Shown here one piece after another: positions 40,822-52,461 of a stretch of 64,000 nucleotides of DNA (position 1 is its first letter; each line of letters opens with the position of its first letter). The translations under genes were made by a program, and so were the position numbers. The notes beneath the pieces are model-generated. The model was not told the DNA's origin, did not search any database, and saw nothing but the letters and a program-made list of their open reading frames with translations. The DNA is from Glycera tridactyla (Eukaryota): assembly GCA_965644265.1 (NCBI GenBank), contig OZ286468.1, positions 17,670,001-17,734,000 on the forward strand, written 5' to 3'.

Positions 40822-41369
40822 CCAGCAGATACAGTCTGCTTTTAACAGGGTTTTTGATGGGGGGGTGGGTGGGGAGGGGAGGATGGAGTGGTAGGAATGA
40901 AAAGAATTTTTTTAGTAGTTCGTTCCTTGGTTAACTGTATGATTCTCCTGCATGTAAATATATGGATTGTGGTATTACATATGCGAGATTAGTCAGGCAT
41001 GCATCCTATGTACATGTTCACACCCGGTAGTGAGAACAGATCAGGGGGTTTAACAGCAGCCATGATAGCTCGTTTGGCCTACTCGTATGAATAGCAGCCA
41101 GGCTTGCATCCTAGGTCCATGCATGTAGGTCAACGTCAGCTTAGTTGTCACTGCTGGTTCTACTGATTGATTTGTGCCAGTGAGTGGCCGGACGTACATC
41201 CCAGGTTCACTATCACATCAAACTTCGGTTATGTTCGGTAGTTTCGAAGCCTTTGTTATGTTAAAGAATGACAAGTAAAGAATAACAAGAATAACAAGTA
41301 GCTCAACACAACATGATGATATTAATGTTAGCTCTACGTTTATATGGGATAGAACAATAGATCTATCTG

Positions 41370-41552
41370 TACCATTTCTCCCTCAAATTCTGCATTCCCC
41401 AGGCCGAATGCCTACGTGCGAACATTATAACAATATAAAATTTATTCAGAGGATGGAACCCCCGGATGACCTCCATTAACACCAGGTGGATCTGTCAGAA
41501 TACACCACCAGAGGTCGCGCCGTTTCCACTGTTTACCTTTGTATTTTTCAAC
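41370..41552 (+). repeat. DIRS left inverted terminal repeat
   Basis: Reverse complement of 49462-49644, with 2 mismatches seen in 183 bp. Confidence 0.95.
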
Positions 41553-41929
41553 TTCGCGTCCTTAGAGACAGTTGAGGAATACCCGGGCTGTCGCGAAAAT
41601 TGGAATTTGCGATACCTACGGACTTTCCAGTGGAATCATTGCGTGTATATCATTAGGATATCATATTCATTGAATCGGAATATTCACAAAATATCCCTGG
41701 ATTGTTTTTGCGAACTTTAATCGCCCGTAATTGTTAGCGTGGTGTAGGATCACGGAGGGGCGCGCGCGGGGGCGTCCACCGCTCACGACGGTGAAGGGGC
41801 CTGTTATTAGAATCAAACGACAGTCTACAGTTCTAGAATGCTGTCGATGGGGTTGTATTCGATTATTTTGCACGTTGAGAATGGGGAATGATTTATGTAC
41901 CTGTATGCGACGTAGATAGTGTCCGGTCA

Positions 41930-42330
41930 TCGTGTCCGGTGTCCGGTGTCCGGTGACAAAATTGGCTATAATTTGACAGCGGCGGTAATAGGTCGCTGAC
42001 GAAATTCAGTCTGTCGGTTGCCGCCGAGTTCGCACGATGACAGTTTACAATTTCGTGGAATTAGGCCTCCAAAATGTTAATGTTCCTTATCATTAAGCAG
42101 TTCTGTGTGCGATCTTAGCGTCCGGTGTCCGGAATATCTTCAGGAGCGTCTAATTCTCGCGCGGCCGTGTCCGGTGAGTGTTTCGTTCACGGCCGTGTCC
42201 GGTAAAATTGACATCGGCGGTAATAGGTCGCTGACGAAATTGGGTTCGTTATTCGCCGATTTGTTTAATTCTCGCGCAGCCGTGTCCGGTGACGTATCCA
42301 GAGTAGTGTGGCGTCCACGGCCGTGTCCGG
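41930..42330 (+). repeat. GTGTCCGGT motif cluster and duplicated CGGCGGTAATAGGTCGCTGACGAAATT in the DIRS 5' region
   Basis: At least 8 (G)TGTCCGG(T) copies; the 27-bp block occurs twice (~41979 and ~42215). CpG-rich. Confidence 0.8.
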
Positions 42331-42681
42331 TGTCAGTTGAGCTTGATATTCAATTCAATTCAATTTTGTTGCTTGTGTATGGTGTTGAAATGACTCTTGC
42401 CTTGGCATTGAGTCTGTGAATTTCATATCATTGATTGTGGGTGGCAAAATTTTTATAATCAATTTTGCCACAGGTGAGCTGAAATGGCCTTCGGGTCTGT
42501 GACTTTCATAACCTTACCTTTCAGATGATGTCATGTCATGTTGATCCTTATATGTGAATTATAGAATTCCTAACACATATATCCCTGCAATCCCTTATCT
42601 CTCGTGGGTGGGCGTCTATATCGCGTACGCGTCTGTGATCCTACACAATCAAATATCAATTGCGAAATACACAAATTGATT

Positions 42682-45600
42682 ATGCCGTCGTCTCAAAAAC
42701 ACGGTTCATGTGGCCACTTTATGGCCATTTGGGACGACCATGACCTATGCCCTTCATGTAGGGCTTGTGGTAAATCTGAAGACTTGGCAAAGTTTGGACA
42801 AAAAGTGTGTGACATTTGTTCAGTGTGGACTTTAGAACGCTGGGCAGCGCATTATAGAAGGAGGAAATTTGCCTCTAAGAAGAAGTCCGCCGCTTCTAAG
42901 AGATCGTCTGAGAAATGTTCAGTCAATTCTGATGGTTCAGTAGACGGATCAGGGGTAAAAACATTGTCAGTTGTGGTCCCTTCATTATCCCGTCCAGATG
43001 ACTCAAAATCTATATCTTCCAGTTGGAACAGCCTAGCAGAGGATATGTCTATGCGCCCAAATCTCCTCTCTTCTATCAAAAGAAGGAAACAGCTGGCTAT
43101 ACAGAGGACCAATGGTGATGCCACAAAAGCTGTCTCAGAGGAGGTGGTAGAGAGACGGAGGTCGTCAGATTTGGACGGTGGTCTCTCTGATAGGGTGCAC
43201 GAACGAGTGGGTGAGGTTGGGAATAAAGCTTGTTATGAAGATGTGTCTGAGTTGGGAGAGCAAATAGAAGAACAAGTGATTGACCAACAGGTGATTCAAT
43301 CTGGTGAGGTTCCAAAAACTCAAGCTTTCATTCAGAACACAGATGAAAATTTTGATTTCCCTCTCACTCTACGTGGATTTCTGGCTGGTGTGCCAGAATA
43401 TCATATTCCACAGATTTCACCCAGCCATATGGGGGGCATGGTTAGAGCCCCGGCTTCGGGTATAATGACAGCACCGGACAGTATAGTGACACCAGTCACT
43501 ACATTACCAATGTCTGGTCCGTCAACTACTGTCACTTTACCGGACGGCCAGAGTGTGTTGGTTTCAGGACAGGTAACCCAGGTTACAGGGCCAGTGGTAG
43601 GTCCAGCAATATGTCCAGTTAATCAGCGAAGCTTAACCACTCAAATACCATGTCAGGTGACACAAGTATTAAGTCAACCGACTCTGTCGGTGATAAGCAA
43701 TACTGGTCCGGTGTCCGGTATAGCGGACTCAGGCAGCAATCATCCGGTAGGGGTGGGTACCACAGTACCAGATATGGGGAATAAAGACGCTGCGTCAAAA
43801 AGGACTAATTTGACAGGGGTCAATTTGCAGCTATTGTCTACTCCGGTGATAGGTAATCTGGTGTCACAAAAGGTAGTTCCCCAGTTGTCTGATCATTCAG
43901 TGCCAGCTCCGGTGAGCATCAGTTCGGTATCAGATAATGCAAACTCAGCAGTGGTCAGTACACAACCAGTGTCCACTCCGATGTCTGGCCGCATGATGCC
44001 TCCAAATGTCAATTCTCTTCCCACGCTACAGCTACAAGCACATGCCCAACTGTTAGCTCAGTTAAATGATGCGGAAGTAGATGATAGTTTACGACCTTCA
44101 GTTTTTGGTTCACCAGATTCTGTTAATGCAGAGGCAGATCGCAGATTGAAGGAACTTACTAGGAAGAGAATTCAGATGGAGGACAATTTGAGAGATTTGC
44201 AGAATATAATGATGAATACCAGGAATGTCATGTCACAACCATTATTTTCAGCTCCTATTCCCTCGGTTACACCATTATTGAAGAGGAAATCGGTGACGAT
44301 TAGTAACATTCCTAGTAAAGTGCCAAAACAGTCATTTGTCCCTGTTACTGCTCCTACTCATGTGCCTACGCCTACTCCCTTGCCAGTTCATATGCATATT
44401 CCTCAGAATATTCCTACTCCTACTATTGTTCCCAACACTGTTCAACAACATAGTATGATTCCAGTTCCTGCTATCCAAAATGATATGGATAGCCCCATTG
44501 ATGACAGGTCTAACAAGGAAAGAGAGAGAGATGCTCAGATGGAGGCCATGCAGTTGAGAATGAAGAAGGTGGAGAAGAAGTTGGGAGATAAAAAGGAATC
44601 TGAGTCACAAAATGATTCTGGCCCTGACTCTGATGAAGAGAAAGAGAAACCAGCTATGAAACGCCGCATGAAAAGTTTCAGACGGTTTGCCACCGACATC
44701 CTACCTGATTATATTCCCTACCCTGAGATTATAGATAGGAGGAAGACTGGGGCAGCTAGTAACGTTCTGAACACATCTTTTGAGGCAGAAAGAAGGAATA
44801 GAAATATTGAATTTCTTGCTGATTCAACGTTACCCTTGTCCCCCTTATTGATCACAAGCCAGGAGATGCTTGATAGATGTTTGCAAGGCTTGGAAGAGGA
44901 GGAAGAGGTTCAGGGCATTTCTACAGACTTTGAGTCTTTCAAAGTAGGCAGGAGTGGGTTGCATGAGGCTAAGGCCAAGTACTTTCGCTCTAATCAACCC
45001 AAAATCTATGGGTCCTCTAGTCGCTCTTATCGTATCAGAAGGACTGATGAGAAATCTCACAGATATATAGTTGAACCCCCATTGATTGATCGGAACTACA
45101 GTCGTTATGGTACTGCTTCAAAGTTAGACCTCAAACCCACTAACGATGAAACTACACTCAGAGAGTCTCTTAAGACGCTGAGTTATGCAGATTTCGCGTT
45201 GGCGGCGGGTTTATCAGCATCTGAACTGACAGATGCTGATATTCCAGATGTTAAGGCTAAATCAAAGGAGGCAATTAGAGTAGGACTCTCAGCAGTAGAA
45301 CATGCGACACAACTTGTACTTAAAGTTTCTGCTAATATGGAGTTAGCTAGAAGAACCTTAGCCCTCAAGTCTACAGACTTTGACGAGGATACTAAAGCAC
45401 AATTACGTGCTCTACCACTAGGACAGGAGGAATTGTTTGGTGGACGCCTAAAGGAAGCGTGCAAACAGACCTCAGAAGCAGGTAGACAGTCACGAGAAAT
45501 GTCATATGATGCTCGTGTAGGTAGACCAAATGAAGGGTTCTTCAGAGGAGGAAACAAGAGAGGTAGAGGGGGCTACCAGAATAGAGGATCCAGGGGCCGT

Positions 45601-45765
45601 TCAAAGAGAGGTAGAGGCCGTGGAAGAGGGGGAAATAACAACACCCATTATAAATCTGAGGATTCCTCCAATAATTATCAGGGACAGGGCCAGCAGAAGC
45701 CAAAACAAGAGGTGAAGGTTACCTTCTCTCGCCCTAGAGGCCGTGGCAAGAAACGTCAGCCCTAG
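42682..45765 (+). CDS. gag: DIRS ORF1 (gag-like), 1027 aa from the first ATG
   Basis: N-terminal Cys/His cluster (CGH..DDHDLCPSCRAC..CDIC..W), long Pro/Ser/Thr-rich middle and RGG-rich C-terminus. Confidence 0.85.
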   Translation: MPSSQKHGSCGHFMAIWDDHDLCPSCRACGKSEDLAKFGQKVCDICSVWTLERWAAHYRRRKFASKKKSAASKRSSEKCSVNSDGSVDGSGVKTLSVVVPSLSRPDDSKSISSSWNSLAEDMSMRPNLLSSIKRRKQLAIQRTNGDATKAVSEEVVERRRSSDLDGGLSDRVHERVGEVGNKACYEDVSELGEQIEEQVIDQQVIQSGEVPKTQAFIQNTDENFDFPLTLRGFLAGVPEYHIPQISPSHMGGMVRAPASGIMTAPDSIVTPVTTLPMSGPSTTVTLPDGQSVLVSGQVTQVTGPVVGPAICPVNQRSLTTQIPCQVTQVLSQPTLSVISNTGPVSGIADSGSNHPVGVGTTVPDMGNKDAASKRTNLTGVNLQLLSTPVIGNLVSQKVVPQLSDHSVPAPVSISSVSDNANSAVVSTQPVSTPMSGRMMPPNVNSLPTLQLQAHAQLLAQLNDAEVDDSLRPSVFGSPDSVNAEADRRLKELTRKRIQMEDNLRDLQNIMMNTRNVMSQPLFSAPIPSVTPLLKRKSVTISNIPSKVPKQSFVPVTAPTHVPTPTPLPVHMHIPQNIPTPTIVPNTVQQHSMIPVPAIQNDMDSPIDDRSNKERERDAQMEAMQLRMKKVEKKLGDKKESESQNDSGPDSDEEKEKPAMKRRMKSFRRFATDILPDYIPYPEIIDRRKTGAASNVLNTSFEAERRNRNIEFLADSTLPLSPLLITSQEMLDRCLQGLEEEEEVQGISTDFESFKVGRSGLHEAKAKYFRSNQPKIYGSSSRSYRIRRTDEKSHRYIVEPPLIDRNYSRYGTASKLDLKPTNDETTLRESLKTLSYADFALAAGLSASELTDADIPDVKAKSKEAIRVGLSAVEHATQLVLKVSANMELARRTLALKSTDFDEDTKAQLRALPLGQEELFGGRLKEACKQTSEAGRQSREMSYDARVGRPNEGFFRGGNKRGRGGYQNRGSRGRSKRGRGRGRGGNNNTHYKSEDSSNNYQGQGQQKPKQEVKVTFSRPRGRGKKRQP

Positions 45766-47872
45766 GGTAGTGAGCGCCACTCTCCCAGTTTCTCCGGAAG
45801 TGGGAGCGCGTCTTCTCAGTTTCTTAAACCCATGGAAGAATTTGACACAGAACAGGTTTATTTTGGACATCATCAGGGAAGGTCTGACTCTATCCTTTCA
45901 AAGTCAACCTCCACTTTCAATGAATTTCCTACCTTTCTCTCTTCCCAAGGGTCAGGAGAAGAGAGAAGCCCTTCTTTTCGAGATCAGGGGGATGTTGGAG
46001 AAGCGTGCCATTATACCGGTGCTCCAACATCCTGACCCAGGTCCGGGGTTTTATTGCAACCTCTTCCTGGTCTCGAAAACAACGGGGGGCTTCAGACCAA
46101 TCATAAATCTGAAACCACTAAACAGGTTCATCAGAAACCAGAAATTCAAAATGGAGACGGCTATGTCCGTAGTGAAAGCAGTGTGCATGAATGATTGGTC
46201 AGTGTCAATAGATCTGAAAGACGCATATTTCCACATACCCATAAGACAGGATTATCAGAAATATCTACGCTTTGCACTGTCAGACACGGAAGCATATCAA
46301 TTCCGAGCTCTTCCGTTCGGACTATCAACAGCACTCAGAATTTTCACGATGGTTCTGAGGGAGGTGGCGCACCATCTTCACAGTCGTGGTATCAAGATCC
46401 ACTTTTATTTAGACGATTGGCTGTTGAGGCACCAGGATCCAGTCACTCTCTCTCAACATTTGGATTATGTCCTGAAATTGGCAACCAGTCTGGGATGGAT
46501 AGTCAATCATCAGAAGTCAGATCTGATCCCCAGCCGTCAATTTACGTATCTGGGAATATTTTTCGACACCCATTCTGGACTGGTAATGCCAACAATGAAG
46601 AGAATAGAGAGGCTGGAGCTTTATGTAAGGCTATTCCTCAGAAGGCCTCGACAGCCAGTCCGATCCATCCTTCGCCTTCTCGGCCATATGTCAAGTATGG
46701 CCGACTACATACATCTGGGAAGACTCCACATGAGACAGCTTCAGATTTTCCTTCTATCTCTGTGGAGACCATTTTCAGACCCTCTCGAAATCATGATTTG
46801 TCTTCCACAGGAAGTGGTGACAAGCTTGAGATGGTGGATGGACAGAAAGAACACTCTGGGGGGAATTCCGCTAATAGAAGAACCTGTGACTGCCACCCTG
46901 ATGACAGACGCCTCCCTCAAGGGCTGGGGAGCATGTCTGATCATAGGCGAAGAGAGACAACAGACGGCAGCAGTATGGCCAGTCTCACGGATGGGCAGAT
47001 CTATCAATGCCCTGGAACTGGAAACAGTATTGCTTGCAATCATCCATTTTTCAGAGTCTCTCATGAATCAGATTGTCTTAATATTAACAGACAATACGAC
47101 AACAGTTTCTTATATAAAGAAGCAGGGGGGCACACATTCATCTCTGATGTGTGCACTCGCATGGAATATTTACACTCAGGCAGAGGAGATGTCAATGAAA
47201 ATAAGAGTGAGGCATATCCCGGGAAAGCGGAATGTATTAGCGGACGCCTTGTCCCGCTCAAGTCCAATACAGACAGAATGGACTCTGGATGCAACAGTCT
47301 TCAACGAGATCTTAGAAAAATTCAAGTTGTATCCAGTAATAGACCTGATGGCTACACCAATAAACACAAGACTTCCTGTGTTCATTTGTCCTTACCCAGA
47401 GCCTCGAGCATTAGCCACGGACGCTCTATCCATGAACTGGGAGGAATTCAGCGTAGCATATGTCTATCCCCCCACATCTCTCTTGAGAGATGTGATAAAT
47501 CGTCTGAGGGGTCTGGAGACCACACTGATATGTATCGCCCCTTGGTGGCCAAACCAGTCTTGGTTTCCAGACCTCTTGGAGATGTCAATAGATCAACCTC
47601 TGGAACTACCAATATCGGTAAATTTGATGACTCAAATAGTTGGCAACAAGAGAGTTTACCACTACTGCCCACAAATAATGAACCTGACCGCATGGTGCTT
47701 ATCAGGAGCACCCTCTCCAGAAGGGGTTATTCGGCAAAGGCTGCGGAGCGGATCACTCGTTCAGTCAGAGATTCATCAGCTAAGATCTATGACAGTAGGT
47801 GGAAGAAATGGGCCTTCTGGTGTGAGGACAGGGGAGTGGATTGTGCACACCCCTCTGCACCAGAGTTGGTAG
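45743..47872 (+). CDS. pol: DIRS RT - RNase H - N6-adenine methyltransferase-like ORF
   Basis: VGARL, GGFRPIINLK, IDLKDAYFHI, LPFGLSTA, YLDDWL; TDASLKGWG, INALELE, TDN, ADALSR; IDLMA..YVYPP..APWWP.QSWF. No in-frame ATG at the 5' end. Confidence 0.93.
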   Translation: MARNVSPRVVSATLPVSPEVGARLLSFLNPWKNLTQNRFILDIIREGLTLSFQSQPPLSMNFLPFSLPKGQEKREALLFEIRGMLEKRAIIPVLQHPDPGPGFYCNLFLVSKTTGGFRPIINLKPLNRFIRNQKFKMETAMSVVKAVCMNDWSVSIDLKDAYFHIPIRQDYQKYLRFALSDTEAYQFRALPFGLSTALRIFTMVLREVAHHLHSRGIKIHFYLDDWLLRHQDPVTLSQHLDYVLKLATSLGWIVNHQKSDLIPSRQFTYLGIFFDTHSGLVMPTMKRIERLELYVRLFLRRPRQPVRSILRLLGHMSSMADYIHLGRLHMRQLQIFLLSLWRPFSDPLEIMICLPQEVVTSLRWWMDRKNTLGGIPLIEEPVTATLMTDASLKGWGACLIIGEERQQTAAVWPVSRMGRSINALELETVLLAIIHFSESLMNQIVLILTDNTTTVSYIKKQGGTHSSLMCALAWNIYTQAEEMSMKIRVRHIPGKRNVLADALSRSSPIQTEWTLDATVFNEILEKFKLYPVIDLMATPINTRLPVFICPYPEPRALATDALSMNWEEFSVAYVYPPTSLLRDVINRLRGLETTLICIAPWWPNQSWFPDLLEMSIDQPLELPISVNLMTQIVGNKRVYHYCPQIMNLTAWCLSGAPSPEGVIRQRLRSGSLVQSEIHQLRSMTVGGRNGPSGVRTGEWIVHTPLHQSW

Positions 47873-48750
47873 ATTTCTTGATCGAACTTTTCGAGTCAGG
47901 ACTATCTCCATCTACTGTCAGAGGATACAGAAATGCTATTCAATCAGTCTTTGTCTATACGGGTTGTGATGTTCTTGCAGAACGAGATGTTAAATCTCTG
48001 CTGAATAATTTCTTTCTGGAGAGACCTGTGGTTCAGAAAATGATCCCACAATGGGATCTGTCTTTGGTTTTGAAGTTTCTACTTTCCAAGACGTTTGAAC
48101 CCCTTACTTCTTGCGGTTTCCTGAATATTACCAGGAAAGTGGTATTTCTGATTGCTCTTGCCTCAGGCCGAAGGAGGAGCGAAATACACGCTTTTTCAGG
48201 TTCCAAGGATGCAGTTAGATTTGCTGCAGATCTTTCGAGCGTTAGATTGTTTTCAGTTCCTGGGTTCTTGGCAAAGAATCAGAGTCCTTTGTCAAAACAA
48301 CCAGAGGTTGTTATTCCATCAATTCCTGTGAATAGTGGAATTCAGAGTTCCTTGTGTCCAGTTAGGGCACTACACACATATTTGGATGGGGTTTCACCCT
48401 TCAGAGGTAGAAGAATTAGACTTTTTATACCTCCCTGTAGGTCCTCACAGAGAGAGATCAGACTTGACAGGATCTCTACATGGATTCAGCAAGTTGTCAG
48501 AATGGCATATGAGGATGCTGATAAAACTGATGAACTACCAGGAAATGTTTCAGCTCATGAGACAAGAGCCATAGCAACCTCATGGAAGTCATTCAATCAG
48601 GCTTGCTCAGTGGATGAACTGATGAGGGCAGCTTTTTGGAAGTCTGGCTCCACATTTGCCACTTTCTATCTACGAGACATGTGTGGCCAGGCTCTCGATC
48701 TGTACTCGTTAGGTCCACTGGTGGTAGCTCAATCAATTATTAATCCTTAG
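46195..48750 (+). CDS. DIRS tyrosine recombinase ORF (5' part overlaps pol)
   Basis: LASGRRRSEIHA, FLAKN, LCPVRAL, HETRAIATSW, AAFWKS..TFATFYLRD: the catalytic R, HxxR, W and Y are present. Confidence 0.93.
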   Translation: MVSVNRSERRIFPHTHKTGLSEISTLCTVRHGSISIPSSSVRTINSTQNFHDGSEGGGAPSSQSWYQDPLLFRRLAVEAPGSSHSLSTFGLCPEIGNQSGMDSQSSEVRSDPQPSIYVSGNIFRHPFWTGNANNEENREAGALCKAIPQKASTASPIHPSPSRPYVKYGRLHTSGKTPHETASDFPSISVETIFRPSRNHDLSSTGSGDKLEMVDGQKEHSGGNSANRRTCDCHPDDRRLPQGLGSMSDHRRRETTDGSSMASLTDGQIYQCPGTGNSIACNHPFFRVSHESDCLNINRQYDNSFLYKEAGGHTFISDVCTRMEYLHSGRGDVNENKSEAYPGKAECISGRLVPLKSNTDRMDSGCNSLQRDLRKIQVVSSNRPDGYTNKHKTSCVHLSLPRASSISHGRSIHELGGIQRSICLSPHISLERCDKSSEGSGDHTDMYRPLVAKPVLVSRPLGDVNRSTSGTTNIGKFDDSNSWQQESLPLLPTNNEPDRMVLIRSTLSRRGYSAKAAERITRSVRDSSAKIYDSRWKKWAFWCEDRGVDCAHPSAPELVDFLIELFESGLSPSTVRGYRNAIQSVFVYTGCDVLAERDVKSLLNNFFLERPVVQKMIPQWDLSLVLKFLLSKTFEPLTSCGFLNITRKVVFLIALASGRRRSEIHAFSGSKDAVRFAADLSSVRLFSVPGFLAKNQSPLSKQPEVVIPSIPVNSGIQSSLCPVRALHTYLDGVSPFRGRRIRLFIPPCRSSQREIRLDRISTWIQQVVRMAYEDADKTDELPGNVSAHETRAIATSWKSFNQACSVDELMRAAFWKSGSTFATFYLRDMCGQALDLYSLGPLVVAQSIINP

Positions 48751-48784
48751 ATGTGTGTATCTATATTGTATATATTAATATAGA

Positions 48785-49294
48785 AATAAACGGGTTTGAT
48801 TCCATTACCAGCTGGTATATGAACTTCCTGTTAGACAAGGAGTTTCTACTCCGGGTCTTATTATTATTATCAAATAACTTGGTTTGATTCCATTACCATA
48901 TGGTATATGAACTTCCTAGTAGACATGGAGTTCCGCTCCGGGTCTTGTATTATATTGAATAACTGGGTTTGATTCCATTACCAGGAATGGTATATGAACT
49001 TCCTAGTAGACATGGAGTTATTCTCCGGGTCTTGTATTATACTAAATAACTGGGTTTGATTCTATTACCGGGTATGGTATATGAACTTCCTAGTAGACAT
49101 GGAGACTTTGCTCCGGGTCTTGTATTATATCTAATAACTAGGTTTGATTCCATTACCAGGAATGGTATATGAACTTCCTAGTAGACAAGGAGTGTATACT
49201 CTGGGTCTATATATATTTTTGAATAACCGGGTTTGATTCCATTACCAGGTTTGGTATATGAACTTCCCGGTAGACATGGAGTGATAGGGGCTCT
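48785..49294. repeat. Array of six ~86-bp double-hairpin repeats
   Basis: Consensus AATAACTGGGTTTGATTCCAT-TACCA(n)TGGTA-TATGAACTTCCTAGTAGACAT-GGAG(n)CTCC-GGGTCTTGTATTAT; units start near 48785, 48873, 48958, 49044, 49133 and 49221. Confidence 0.95.
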
Positions 49295-49319
49295 ACGCCC
49301 ACCATCCGTGTCATATTCA

Positions 49320-49412
49320 TGCAGAATTTGAGGGAGAAATGGTACAGATAGATCCCCCCCAGGTTTATTCATTTAACCTGGGGATCTATACTTACCATTT
49401 CTCCCTCAAATT
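49320..49412 (+). repeat. DIRS internal complementary region (ICR)
   Basis: 49320-49353 is complementary to the left end 41361-41394. 49354-49412 is complementary to the right end 49625-49683. Contains a CCCCAGGTT/AACCTGGGG hairpin. Confidence 0.95.
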
Positions 49413-49461
49413 GGATGGTCCCTCCCGTCCGTCCCCGCTGTAGAGCTCTTTTTTCGAGCTC

Positions 49462-49683
49462 GTTGAAAAATACAAAGGTAAACAGTGGAAACAGCGCGAC
49501 CTCTGGTGGTGTATTCTGACAGATCCACCTGGTGTTAATGGAGGTCATCCGGGGGTTCCATCCTCTAAATAAATTTTATATTGTTATAATGTTCGCACGT
49601 AGGCATTCGGCCTGGGGAATGCAGAATTTGAGGGAGAAATGGTAAGTATAGATCCCCAGGTTAAATGAATAAACCTGGGGGGG
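49462..49683 (-). repeat. DIRS right inverted terminal repeat plus right extension
   Basis: Inverse of the left ITR to 49644, then an extension ending in a G-run (49677-49689). Confidence 0.93.
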
Positions 49684-52461
49684 GGGGGGTCAGTCAGGGT
49701 TTGCCCATTTGCTAACTCACTCATTTGTTGGTCATTTTCTGGGATATGCCAATATTTCCCTCCAGATTGGGATAGGTGCGCCATCTGATTGAAGGTTTGG
49801 AGTGGGCATGTGGTCATACACCAGATGTCGCCATGCACTGGGGGGCATCAAATTGGTGGCACGGTTGACGAAAGTGAGCAGCTGTCGCAAACGGATTTGG
49901 GGCAGTTCCTGGCAAAGGATAGTTCCCGCACCCATGCACACCCATTCACACACAAGTATACATCCACACTCACTCATACAGGGTACTGGTGACCGATGGT
50001 AGGACACGCGTAAGGCCCTGAAGTTGCATTACTGGGTGCTCGCAAACACACTCACACTTTTTGCATTCACATTTACACGCACTTCCTCTCGAGCACTGGC
50101 ACACACGCAGTCTCACGTTCATCTCACTCCTGTGTACTGATGCAGTTTCAATTTTGAGCAAGTATAGGTGTATATACAATTAGTATCAGCAAATTGGTGC
50201 ATTTTGTGCCCGCAAGAACTGGCATACACACACATTCACCCACACAGTACCCGGGCGTATACACAAATACCAAGATGTAGCAACAATATAATGACCGACG
50301 GTACCTGGCACATGCGTATAGAAAAACAAGCAATCCAATTAGTGCATTATTGCCTCAGAGAAATCATTATCACACAAGCGCCCACACACGCACATACACT
50401 CAACATGCAGACATACGCACAAAAATCAAGATGTATCAACAATGTAGTGGGGATGGTGACTGCAAATATGTGTGGAATATCAATCCAATTTGTGCGATTT
50501 ACCTCAGAGAAGCAGTATCAGGAGGTAGGTGTATTCTGGCCCCACAACTGTCATAGGCACACTCCTACACCCGTGCACGTGCACACAACACAGTTGTGAG
50601 CACACGCTAACACATTCCAATGCTCACCTCACATGAATTGCACACACAGTCATGCATACTTCATTGGCGTATCATCCCTATATTCCACATGATGCCTCCG
50701 AGATCCTAGTACAAGCAATTTCCCTTGCCAACATCCACCCAGAAACATTATTAGTTAGTGTTTGAGAAGATCATGTTGTACAATGGTGACTATTCGCAAC
50801 CCACACACACTTGAGCACATTCATACACACACACCCTCACTCACCCACACACTAAGTTGTGTGCAAGTCATGCTCACACACACGCTCACGCGAGACCTCT
50901 AGGATCCAATACAAGCAATTTCCCGCATGCATGGCAGGTCATAAGATGTACTACCATATACATTCTCCTAGAAATATCATTTGCTCACAGGGGTATGTAC
51001 AAACGTTATTCCCAACACCACATTATGTGTCACGAGTATCAAGCAAACAGTGTATTTCAGCAATTGTCGGAGAGTTCAATATGATGATCTTGATTCACGT
51101 ACACACATACACACACACTCTCTCAATCACACACATGCTCAGCCTGGTTAATTTGACACTCCCGTCACATGCATTGTGATTGATATCAATGTTTTTTGAT
51201 ATGACATTCCCAGTTAACCAAACAGTAAATAGCAGTAGATGTCAATGGATTTGGTCGGATGCTCTCGATACACGCACGCTCATGAGTGCACACACACACA
51301 CACACGCTTTCACTTCCTCACACACTCAGGCTGGAGCAAATTATTTCATCACAAAACACAGACCGCAGCAGAGTGAGCAGATAAATCACAGCACCACATA
51401 TCACTTGATATGTCGGATAATAAGTTACAATTGATAACAATATATTTGGCATGACGCTCCCCATTCATGCTCACTTATGCATGCATGCTCCCAATTCATG
51501 CACACACATACACGCATACTCACAGTGTGTAATAATTGATATCATAGTTTCCGGATCGACACACACAATTGTCAGACTTAACATCGCGTGACAAGGAAAA
51601 CATTAGTATGTACAGACAATGTCCCCACACCACATGAAATAGGCAGGTGTTTACATTGTAGTGGTTGTAATGTGATTGACCTGTCTCACTGGCGGCAATG
51701 ACAAGTAGTTGGTTACAAATTTGACAGCAGGTCCGACTTAACATACTTACTCATTAACATTCTCTGGCTGTGCCAAACATACACACACACACATGCTTGC
51801 ACTCTCTCCCACTTCTGCACTCAAACAGCTTCACAACTGTCCTTAACCTGTCAGCAGGAACCAATTCACCTACAGTCACCCACCCATGTAGCTTATATAA
51901 CATATTCACACACGTCAGACTCATGTATGCTCGAATACACTAGCACATACCCTTCACCCTCTGAGCATGTAGCTTTTGTGTTTGGAAATCATAGCAAACA
52001 TGTAGCTATTTATGTTTGGGAATCATATTAGAGCATCTACCTCATTAATAGTGCATTGGAGTTTATGGTCATAATAGAGACAGATAGCATGGATTTCGGG
52101 GTCACTTACACTTACACATACATGCGCACTCAGATTCGTACATCTAACGCGCACCCAACATTTACATGTATGCTTGCACATGTGGTTGTCATTTATGCCG
52201 GTTTGGGTGCCGCATCGTACCTGTATGCTCCCTTGCACGTGCACCCTGTCGCAACACATAGTATTACATAGAATATGTTGAACTAGCACAACCATCATAT
52301 CAGTTTCATAATCTCTGAGTAAGAGAATGGAACTCATACCAGCTCACGGCACTCGATGTAATATTCAAACTGCTGTTCTCTTCTATGTCCAAACAAGGTT
52401 CCTACACTGGTGTCTCATGCTCAGATATGTCCATGACTTGGTGAGCGAGACGAGCTCAGAA

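What the first reader, a model, noticed from the sequence alone, without database searches (positions are those of the whole stretch)
48785..49294. Six-unit array of double hairpins with conserved stems and hypervariable loops in the DIRS 3' region
Seen: hairpin 1 TACCA-[GC, TA, GGAA, GGTA, GGAA, GGTT]-TGGTA, where unit 4 has A>G giving G.U. Hairpin 2 AGAC-nn-GGAG-[TTTCTA, TTCCG, TTATT, ACTTTG, TGTATA, TGATAGGGG]-CTC(C/T)-GG-GTCT, where units 5-6 have C>T giving G.U (unit 6 lacks the final GG-GTCT). Variation in sequence and length concentrates in the loops and the AT-rich linkers, and stem changes preserve pairing. TACCA/TGGTA also occurs at the ITR and ICR ends. Inference: selection on single-stranded structure, i.e. 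an array of an unrecognised RNA or ssDNA motif (packaging, processing or self-cleavage, RT pausing before the ICR, or YR/Gag binding). It does not match hammerhead, HDV, twister or pistol cores by eye.
Basis: partly seen in the sequence, partly recalled or inferred. Interest (0 to 1): 0.8.

Follow-up and report, generated by a model that had tools for sequence, protein, structure and literature searches.

The report
Hairpin-pair repeat in DIRS retrotransposon tail
An intact DIRS-type jumping gene carries, between its last gene and its end-repair sequence, six tandem copies of an 88-base unit that folds into two small stem-loops; the pattern of changes suggests the fold is under selection, but only this one locus could be studied.

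Summary
Positions 48784-49286 hold an 88-bp tandem array of 5.8 copies. It lies between the stop codon of the tyrosine-recombinase gene (48750) and the internal complementary region (ICR, 49319-49412) of a complete DIRS1-like element (41360-49683).

Each unit folds on the sense strand into two stem-loops:
- Hairpin A has three helices.
- Hairpin B is a two-helix stem-loop.

Variable columns are 14 of 14 in the apical loops, 15 of 19 in the linkers, 6 of 12 in P1 and 4 of 50 in the rest of the unit.

Hairpin B is a shortened paralogue of a single-copy stem-loop that lies just before the ICR in related elements (L001, L002). The closing helix of that stem-loop shows an A-U to U-A flip between the window and the relatives.

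None of 13 relatives' loci has a tandem array there. The two 3' intervals tested for folding, L001 and L002, are hairpin-rich.

There is no Rfam match, no tRNA, and no paper describing such an array.

Best reading: a lineage-specific amplification of a structured 3'-UTR module, probably a multivalent protein-binding site on the genomic RNA. The function is inferred, not shown.

The evidence is limited to six units at one locus, with no RNA data. The scan noted a similar six-copy array elsewhere in this genome (s1-333414).

The parts
41360..41552 (+). Left inverted terminal repeat of the DIRS1-like element
   Evidence: 193 nt, 97% complementary to 49462-49654. Its first 36 nt are 100% complementary to 49319-49354.
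47692..48750 (+). Tyrosine-recombinase ORF (352 aa), the last gene of the element. Its stop lies 34 nt before the array.
   Evidence: Translation. 422 homologues at E<=1e-10, the best at 56% identity, some with precomputed Pfam PF00589 or PF13495. The neighbouring ORF 45743-47872 hits RVT_1.
48785..48872 (+). Unit 1. P1 variant AACGGG/CCUGUU, loop 1 GC, loop 2 UUUCUA.
   Evidence: CM score 97.9 bits.
48873..48959 (+). Unit 2. P1 ACUUGG/CCUAGU with one U-U mismatch (G in X1 contigs), loop 1 UA, loop 2 UUCCG.
48960..49046 (+). Unit 3, the reference unit. P1 48962-67/49002-07. P2 48971 and 48973-75 with 48996-99. P3 48979-83/48988-92. P4 49008-11/49029-32. P5 49014-17/49023-26.
49047..49134 (+). 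Unit 4. G.U in P3, loop 1 GGUA, loop 2 ACUUUG.
49135..49223 (+). Unit 5. P1 ACUAGG/CCUAGU with all Watson-Crick pairs, G.U in P5, loop 2 UGUAUA.
49224..49272 (+). Unit 6, hairpin A. P1 ACCGGG/CCCGGU, a compensated C-G pair plus G-C.
   Evidence: -16.1 kcal/mol.
49273..49312 (+). Terminal pre-ICR stem-loop. The hairpin-B 5' arm of unit 6 (GACAUGGA) pairs with the conserved block UCCGUGUC. This is the counterpart of the single-copy stem-loop of relatives.
   Evidence: -19.4 kcal/mol, z -3.4. Homology with L001 and L002.
49319..49412 (+). Internal complementary region (ICR)
   Evidence: 49319-49354 is complementary to the left-ITR start and 49354-49412 to the right-ITR end, both 100%.
49462..49683 (+). 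Right inverted terminal repeat
   Evidence: pairs I1 and I2.

Best explanation
The array is a lineage-specific six-fold tandem amplification of a two-stem-loop module in the 3' untranslated tail of an intact DIRS1-like retrotransposon.

The module consists of:
- Hairpin A, about 46 nt: P1, an internal loop, P2, an internal loop, P3.
- Hairpin B, about 26 nt: P4, an internal loop, P5.
- An A/U-rich linker of about 14 nt.

Hairpin B is a shortened copy of a stem-loop that related elements carry once, immediately before the ICR. The last unit still uses that original 3' arm.

I read the module as a structure of the sense-strand genomic RNA held by purifying selection on its core (stems and internal loops). 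The apical loops and linkers are free to drift, and the basal helix changes only by compensated substitutions.

The most likely working mode is a multivalent binding platform for an element-encoded protein (the Gag-like ORF1 product or RT). It would mark the full-length RNA for packaging or reverse transcription next to the ICR.

Shown: the anatomy, the variation pattern, the paralogy and the strand preference. Inferred: selection, the RNA level of action, and the protein-binding function.
For: - Array and element anatomy.
- The same fold comes from MFE, per-unit folds and RNAalifold.
- 97.8% of 138 pair cells are paired, against 32-45% when the partners are slid. Two pairs carry double changes, and 6 of 500 shuffles reach the covariation score.
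- Variable columns are 14/14 apical, 15/19 linker, 6/12 P1 and 4/50 core. Pairwise diversity is 0.56-0.67 in the loops and 0-0.08 in the core.
- The sense consensus fold is -22.65 kcal/mol and the antisense -16.73. All six G.U cells become A.C on the other strand.
- Contigs of run X1 that differ from the window at about 1% show no change in any apical loop. Two of their differences restore the consensus or a base pair (48880, 49063). The loops are therefore not mutation hot spots on that time scale.
- The pre-ICR stem-loop is conserved in L001 and L002, whose YR proteins are 52-56% identical to the window's. z is -3.4 to -4.05, with GACAU/GUGUC in the window against GUCAU/GUGAC in the relatives.
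- The same interval is hairpin-rich in relatives: L001 z -6.7, L002 z -3.6, against z -2.1 for a coding control in the window's own YR ORF.
- L001 and L028 repeat a UAGGUA-loop-UACCUA hairpin with differing loops.
Against: - There are only six paralogous units from one locus.
- The two compensated pairs may be one or two events, and units 1 and 6 share one of them.
- The single hairpins are weak to moderate (A: -7 to -16 kcal/mol, z -0.4 to -2; B: about -10, z -2.6 to -3). The array-wide z of -4.1 is equal on both strands and inflated by repetition.
- Unpaired core bases are as conserved as paired ones. This fits sequence-specific recognition at the DNA level as well.
- None of 13 relatives' loci, and none of the sister DIRS families in run X1, shows the array. 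Multiplicity is therefore not required by DIRS elements in general.
- No RNA run holds the stretch, so transcription through the array is only assumed from the DIRS model.
Confidence: 0.45

Rival explanations
1. The array is a neutral 3'-UTR minisatellite. Replication or RT slippage duplicated a stretch that happened to contain the functional pre-ICR stem-loop and a neighbouring hairpin. The extra copies do nothing. Their similarity reflects recency or homogenisation, and intra-hairpin template switching makes the arms co-vary without selection.
For: - The array is absent from all 13 relatives' loci and from sister families in the same genome.
- Short tandem arrays in retrotransposon UTRs are common and often neutral (Ogre 3' UTR, PMC7004042).
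- Template switching can create and keep hairpin complementarity (PMC8794818). P1 of unit 6 is a perfect palindrome, as one switch event would give.
- The terminal units are the most divergent, as in arrays homogenised by unequal exchange.
Against: - A young or homogenised array should have near-identical loops. Instead all 14 apical-loop columns vary, while flanks of 30 nt are identical.
- The loops are not hypermutable between copies or haplotypes: there are 0 loop differences in the X1 contigs.
- Unit 1 keeps a G.U beside two compensated pairs, which a simple arm-copying event would have erased.
Confidence: 0.3
2. The hairpins act in the single-stranded cDNA intermediate rather than in RNA. 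Local hairpins next to the ICR would keep it free for annealing with the ITR ends, or would offer a fold-back primer for second-strand synthesis.
For: - DIRS-1 makes mostly linear single-stranded cDNA. The ICR is needed after first-strand synthesis, and the primer is unknown (PMC7192593).
- The antisense strand folds with an equal z-score. L001 antisense has z -7.8.
Against: - On the antisense strand six pair cells become A.C mismatches and P1 loses a pair. The consensus energy is -16.7 against -22.7 kcal/mol.
- DNA hairpins of 4-6 bp are weaker still.
Confidence: 0.1
3. The array is a set of double-stranded DNA binding sites. These could be accessory sites for the element's tyrosine recombinase, or for a host factor in enhancer- or insulator-like fashion. 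The palindromes would then be dimer sites.
For: - Core sequence, unpaired positions included, is invariant.
- AATGGTA and TTACCA words recur in the ICR and ITR ends.
- Arrays of factor sites with AT-rich spacers are known in retroelement UTRs (gypsy Su(Hw) sites; from my own knowledge).
Against: - The spacer between the TACCA and TGGTA half-sites varies from 2 to 4 bp, which is unusual for a recombinase core or dimer site.
- The compensated P1 changes and the G.U pattern have no meaning for duplex DNA.
- The shared words are only 5-7 nt long.
Confidence: 0.1
4. The units are self-cleaving ribozymes or small-RNA precursors that process the transcript into unit-length pieces.
For: Tandem small ribozymes exist in other retroelements (Penelope-like elements, retrozymes; from my own knowledge). 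The internal-loop bases are invariant.
Against: - No hammerhead, HDV, twister, pistol, hatchet or hairpin-ribozyme match, even at E up to 10.
- The unit has two independent hairpins with no multi-helix junction.
- The hairpins are too short for animal miRNA precursors.
- Cleavage upstream of the ICR would sever the sequence the element needs (PMC7192593).
Confidence: 0.03

Closest known systems
Tandem repeats in the 3' UTR of LTR retrotransposons (for example Ogre/Tat elements, a source of satellites; PMC7004042)
   Same: A short, lineage-specific tandem array inside the non-coding tail of an autonomous retroelement, between the last ORF and the terminal repeat.
   Different: Those arrays are described as hypervariable, with no conserved fold. 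Here each unit is a conserved two-hairpin structure with compensated stem changes, the host is a tyrosine-recombinase (DIRS) element, and there is no sign of satellite amplification (depth in X1 is like the flanks).
Cis-acting 3' RNA elements of retroelements: the MPMV constitutive transport element, the RSV direct repeats, the 3' stem-loop of stringent LINEs (UnaL2) bound by their RT, and the R2 3' UTR (from my own knowledge)
   Same: Position just downstream of the last gene. Stem-loops with conserved internal loops and free apical loops. Repetition of the motif in some cases.
   Different: No sequence or covariance-model similarity. The function here is untested. No such element has been defined for DIRS or other YR retroelements.
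The DIRS-1 3'-terminal hairpin proposed as a self-primer (Poulter and Goodwin, cited in PMC7192593)
   Same: A hairpin near the 3' end of a DIRS transcript, suggested to serve reverse transcription.
   Different: That hairpin lies in the right terminal repeat at the RNA's very end and is single. The array here lies upstream of the ICR, 400-900 nt from the element's end.
Hairpins made and kept by template switching (PMC8794818)
   Same: Short inverted repeats whose arms change together.
   Different: That is a mutational process, not a functional class. It does not by itself explain an invariant core beside fully variable apical loops.

Membership tests
DIRS1-like retrotransposon (the host element) | Inverted terminal repeats | tested here: met
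   41360-41552 against 49462-49654, 193 nt, 97% complementary.
DIRS1-like retrotransposon (the host element) | An internal complementary region matching the outer ends of both terminal repeats, placed side by side | tested here: met
   49319-49354 matches the left-ITR start and 49354-49412 the right-ITR end, both 100% complementary.
DIRS1-like retrotransposon (the host element) | RT and tyrosine recombinase genes, no DDE integrase | tested here: met
   RVT_1 at E 3e-22. The YR ORF has 422 homologues, several with PF00589 or PF13495. No integrase hit.
Any Rfam family, including hammerhead, HDV, twister, pistol, hatchet and hairpin ribozymes, and tRNA-like elements | Score against the family covariance model at or near the gathering threshold | tested here: not met
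   cmscan of 42000-50500 at E up to 10 gave no match inside 48784-49312. ARAGORN found no tRNA.
Retrotransposon 3'-UTR minisatellite | Head-to-tail repeats in the non-coding tail of the element, variable among related elements | tested here: met
   TRF. Absent from 13 relatives' loci and skipped by sister families in X1.
Structured cis-acting RNA element | Base pairs kept by compensatory change in independent lineages | tested here: inconclusive
   Two pairs with double changes among six units (6 of 500 shuffles). One A-U/U-A flip in the pre-ICR stem between the window and L001/L002. Too few sequences for a formal test.
Structured cis-acting RNA element | Present in the transcript and folded in vitro or in vivo | not testable with these tools
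   No RNA run holds the stretch. There are no probing data.

The most novel reading that the evidence does not exclude
The two-hairpin module, and its single-copy ancestor the pre-ICR stem-loop, would be the first defined cis-acting RNA signal of tyrosine-recombinase retrotransposons. It would be the site where the element's Gag-like protein or RT picks out the genomic RNA. In this lineage it is amplified six-fold to raise avidity.
Probability: 0.25. Interest if true: 0.7.

Novelty: new variant of a known kind. Interest (0 to 1): 0.45.

Why it matters
How DIRS elements choose and prime their RNA template is unknown. The only experimental work states that no primer or initiation signal has been determined (PMC7192593).

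A conserved stem-loop abutting the ICR, multiplied here into an array with unit-specific loops, gives a concrete and testable candidate for such a signal. It also gives a natural series of six variants that shows which positions tolerate change.

If the array is instead neutral, it is a clean example of how a functional hairpin seeds a minisatellite inside a retroelement.

Tried and rejected
- **More copies of the unit.** Exact-pattern scans of JGI metagenome contigs found nothing with hairpin A. The hairpin-B pattern gave 15 single matches in contigs with no other link to the element, which I take for chance. The prokaryotic genome scan gave one chance match, in Psychroflexus.
- **Viral contigs.** A search with the YR protein found no relatives.
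- **Covariance model.** Model R1, built from the six units, found only those units in the window and in 8 relatives' loci.
- **Reads.** Only Logan contigs of 4 runs were available and none is on record as RNA. The array is present only in organism A (X1).
- **MAFFT/RNAalifold on the three pre-ICR stem-loops.** The window's 3' arm was misaligned, so that comparison rests on direct reading and single folds.
- **Hairpin-1-like string in the YR ORF (48129-48144).** Its local alignment score is within the shuffle range, so I rejected it as evidence of origin.
- **B-box or tRNA-like reading of GGTTTGATTCC.** No tRNA and no Rfam hit.
- **k-turn or hammerhead-like reading of the internal loops.** The geometry does not fit (my own inspection) and there is no model hit.
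- **Complementarity between GACAUGG and the 5'-UTR CCGTGTC repeats.** Only 7 nt, and broken in units 1 and 5. Left as a side note.

Full report
**1. What is there**

Tandem Repeats Finder reports 48784-49286 as an 88-bp repeat, 5.8 copies, 85% matches. The unit's conserved 16- and 17-mers occur six times and nowhere else in the 64-kb window, against fewer than one expected by chance.

The array lies inside a complete DIRS1-like retrotransposon:
- Inverted terminal repeats are at 41360-41552 and 49462-49654 (97% complementary).
- The ICR at 49319-49412 has two halves. They are 100% complementary to the first 36 nt of the left repeat and to the last 59 nt of the right repeat (49625-49683).
- An ORF with an RVT_1 domain is present.
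- The last ORF (47692-48750) is a tyrosine recombinase with hundreds of homologues.

The array therefore fills almost all of the 568 nt between the recombinase stop and the ICR.

**2. The fold**

Minimum-energy folding of the sense strand, folding of each unit alone and RNAalifold on the six aligned units all give the same picture.

- Hairpin A has three helices: P1 (ACUGGG/CCUAGU, 6 bp), P2 (G-C plus UUC/GAA) and P3 (UACCA/UGGUA). They are separated by small internal loops.
- Hairpin B has two helices: P4 (AGAC/GUCU) and P5 (GGAG/CUCC).

Stabilities are modest:
- Hairpin A: -7 to -16 kcal/mol (z -0.4 to -2.0).
- Hairpin B: about -10 kcal/mol (z -2.6 to -3.0).
- Whole array: z -4.1 on both strands. 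This is inflated by repetition, since a coding control gives z -2.1.

Thermodynamics alone would not carry the claim.

**3. The pattern of variation**

On the named structure, 97.8% of 138 pair cells are standard pairs, against 32-45% when the partners are slid by 1-3 columns. Two P1 pairs carry changes on both sides: C-G to A-U in unit 1, and U-A to C-G in units 1 and 6. Six of 500 column shuffles reach the covariation score.

Of nine substitutions in P1, eight keep or improve pairing. The ninth (U-U in unit 2) is absent from the contigs of run X1, which read G at 48880.

| Column class | Variable columns |
|---|---|
| Apical loops | 14 of 14 |
| Linkers | 15 of 19 |
| P1 | 6 of 12 |
| Remaining core | 4 of 50 |

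The contrast between apical loops and core gives Fisher p about 6e-11. Pairwise diversity is 0.56-0.67 in the loops and 0-0.08 in the core.

One correction matters. Inside the core, unpaired bases are as invariant as paired ones (2/16 against 2/34 variable). What is conserved is a core of stems plus internal loops, not stems as such.

**4. Strand**

All six G.U cells lie on the sense strand and would be A.C on the other. The consensus fold is -22.65 kcal/mol for the sense strand and -16.73 for the antisense. This modestly favours the RNA, or plus-strand, reading.

**5. Are the loops mutation hot spots?**

Contigs of run X1 cover most of the array. Two of them (records 1 and 6) differ from the window at about 1% overall. 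No listed difference lies in an apical loop. Two of the three listed differences in the array restore the unit consensus (48880, 49063), and the third is in a linker (49042).

Loop 1 also keeps a weak odd/even-unit signal: GGAA in units 3 and 5; UA, GGUA and GGUU in units 2, 4 and 6.

The loops thus look old and stable rather than hypermutable. This favours an old array with a constrained core over a young array with hot loops.

Caveat: X1 may be the sample the assembly came from, in which case only the differing contigs are informative.

**6. Relatives**

The closest recombinases in the protein collection are only 52-56% identical. I fetched 13 loci. Several are filed under bacterial symbiont MAGs but are evidently host DNA.

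- None has a tandem array after the recombinase gene.
- The covariance model built from the six units finds nothing in the eight of them I searched.
- Sister DIRS families in run X1 match up to the end of the recombinase gene. Two of them resume at 49289-49291 and a third at 49183. All skip most or all of the array (joints).

The array is therefore lineage-specific.

The same interval is nevertheless hairpin-rich in relatives: L001 z -6.7, L002 z -3.6. L001 and L028 carry three and two copies of a UAGGUA-loop-UACCUA hairpin with different loops.

**7. Hairpin B has a single-copy counterpart**

The stretch from unit 6's hairpin-B 5' arm to the ICR aligns with L001 and L002. In all three elements a 40-48-nt stem-loop closes a few bases before the ICR:

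| Element | Energy (kcal/mol) | z |
|---|---|---|
| Window 49273-49312 | -19.4 | -3.4 |
| L001 | -14.1 | -3.8 |
| L002 | -22.7 | -4.05 |

The closing helix reads GACAU/GUGUC in the window and GUCAU/GUGAC in both relatives, which is an A-U to U-A flip.

The 3' arm of the repeated hairpin B (CUCCGGGUCU) resembles the conserved block (AUCCGUGUCA). Hairpin B is therefore a shortened paralogue of this pre-ICR stem-loop. The array arose by tandem duplication of "hairpin A plus pre-ICR stem-loop", and the last unit still uses the original 3' arm.

This comparison rests on three sequences and on direct reading. MAFFT misaligned the trimmed hairpins.

**8. Known families and literature**

cmscan against all of Rfam at E up to 10 gives nothing in the array. 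The only nearby hits are weak miRNA-model matches to the long ICR palindrome. ARAGORN finds no tRNA.

Full-text searches found no description of hairpin arrays or 3'-UTR structures in DIRS elements.

The experimental paper on DIRS-1 states that the ICR is needed after first-strand synthesis and that the primer and start signal of reverse transcription are unknown (PMC7192593).

**9. Interpretation**

I commit to this reading: a structured 3'-UTR module of the genomic RNA, amplified six-fold in this lineage and held by selection on its core. It most likely serves as a multivalent binding platform for an element-encoded protein near the ICR.

- Anatomy and paralogy: confidence about 0.85.
- Selection on structure: about 0.55.
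- The stated function: about 0.3.
- Overall: 0.45.

The main rival is a neutral minisatellite seeded by a functional hairpin, with template switching (PMC8794818) accounting for the co-varying arms (0.3). Roles in the single-stranded cDNA (0.1) or as duplex-DNA protein sites (0.1) remain open. Self-cleavage or small-RNA production is unlikely (0.03).

**10. Limits**

- One locus, six paralogous units and three sequences for the pre-ICR comparison.
- No RNA reads and no other copy of the family could be fetched.
- A note from this scan (s1-333414) reports a six-copy three-stem hairpin array before a DIRS ICR on another piece of the same genome. I could not read that sequence, so it is a lead and not support.

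Noticed in passing
window 41917-42335: The 5' UTR of the same DIRS element carries at least ten copies of GTGTCCGG(T), four of them as GGCCGTGTCCGGT (families D2 and D4). The word CCGTGTC also forms the 3' arm of the pre-ICR stem-loop and is complementary to GACAUGG of hairpin B. This could be a 5'-3' pairing or a shared protein site, or it could be chance.
   Followed up: partly
window 48764-48771; also L001, L002, L008, L029 just after the YR stop: A UGUAUAUA word (Pumilio-type motif) recurs in the AT-rich stretch right after the recombinase stop codon in the window and in several relatives.
   Followed up: no
window 48129-48144: TACCAGGAAAGTGGTA inside the recombinase ORF closely resembles hairpin 1 of the array. 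The local alignment score (27) is within the range of shuffled units (mean 22.3, maximum 32), so it is not significant.
   Followed up: yes
window 49299-49307 and 49420-49440; same places in L001, L002, L003, L025-L027: C-rich blocks flank the ICR on both sides and are kept across distant relatives (CCCACCATCC before it, CCCTCCCGTCCGTCCCCG after it).
   Followed up: no
L003-L006, L025, L026 (records of Candidatus Thiodiazotropha and Sedimenticola MAGs): DIRS elements with RT and YR genes sit on contigs filed as bacterial symbiont genomes. These are almost certainly host (marine invertebrate) DNA binned by mistake.
   Followed up: no
The ITRs, ICR, RT and YR show that 41360-49683 is a DIRS1-like element.
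   Followed up: partly
window 42604-45765: ORF1 of the element is unusually long for a DIRS gag (1053 aa counted from the first alternative start) and has no Pfam hit.
   Followed up: no
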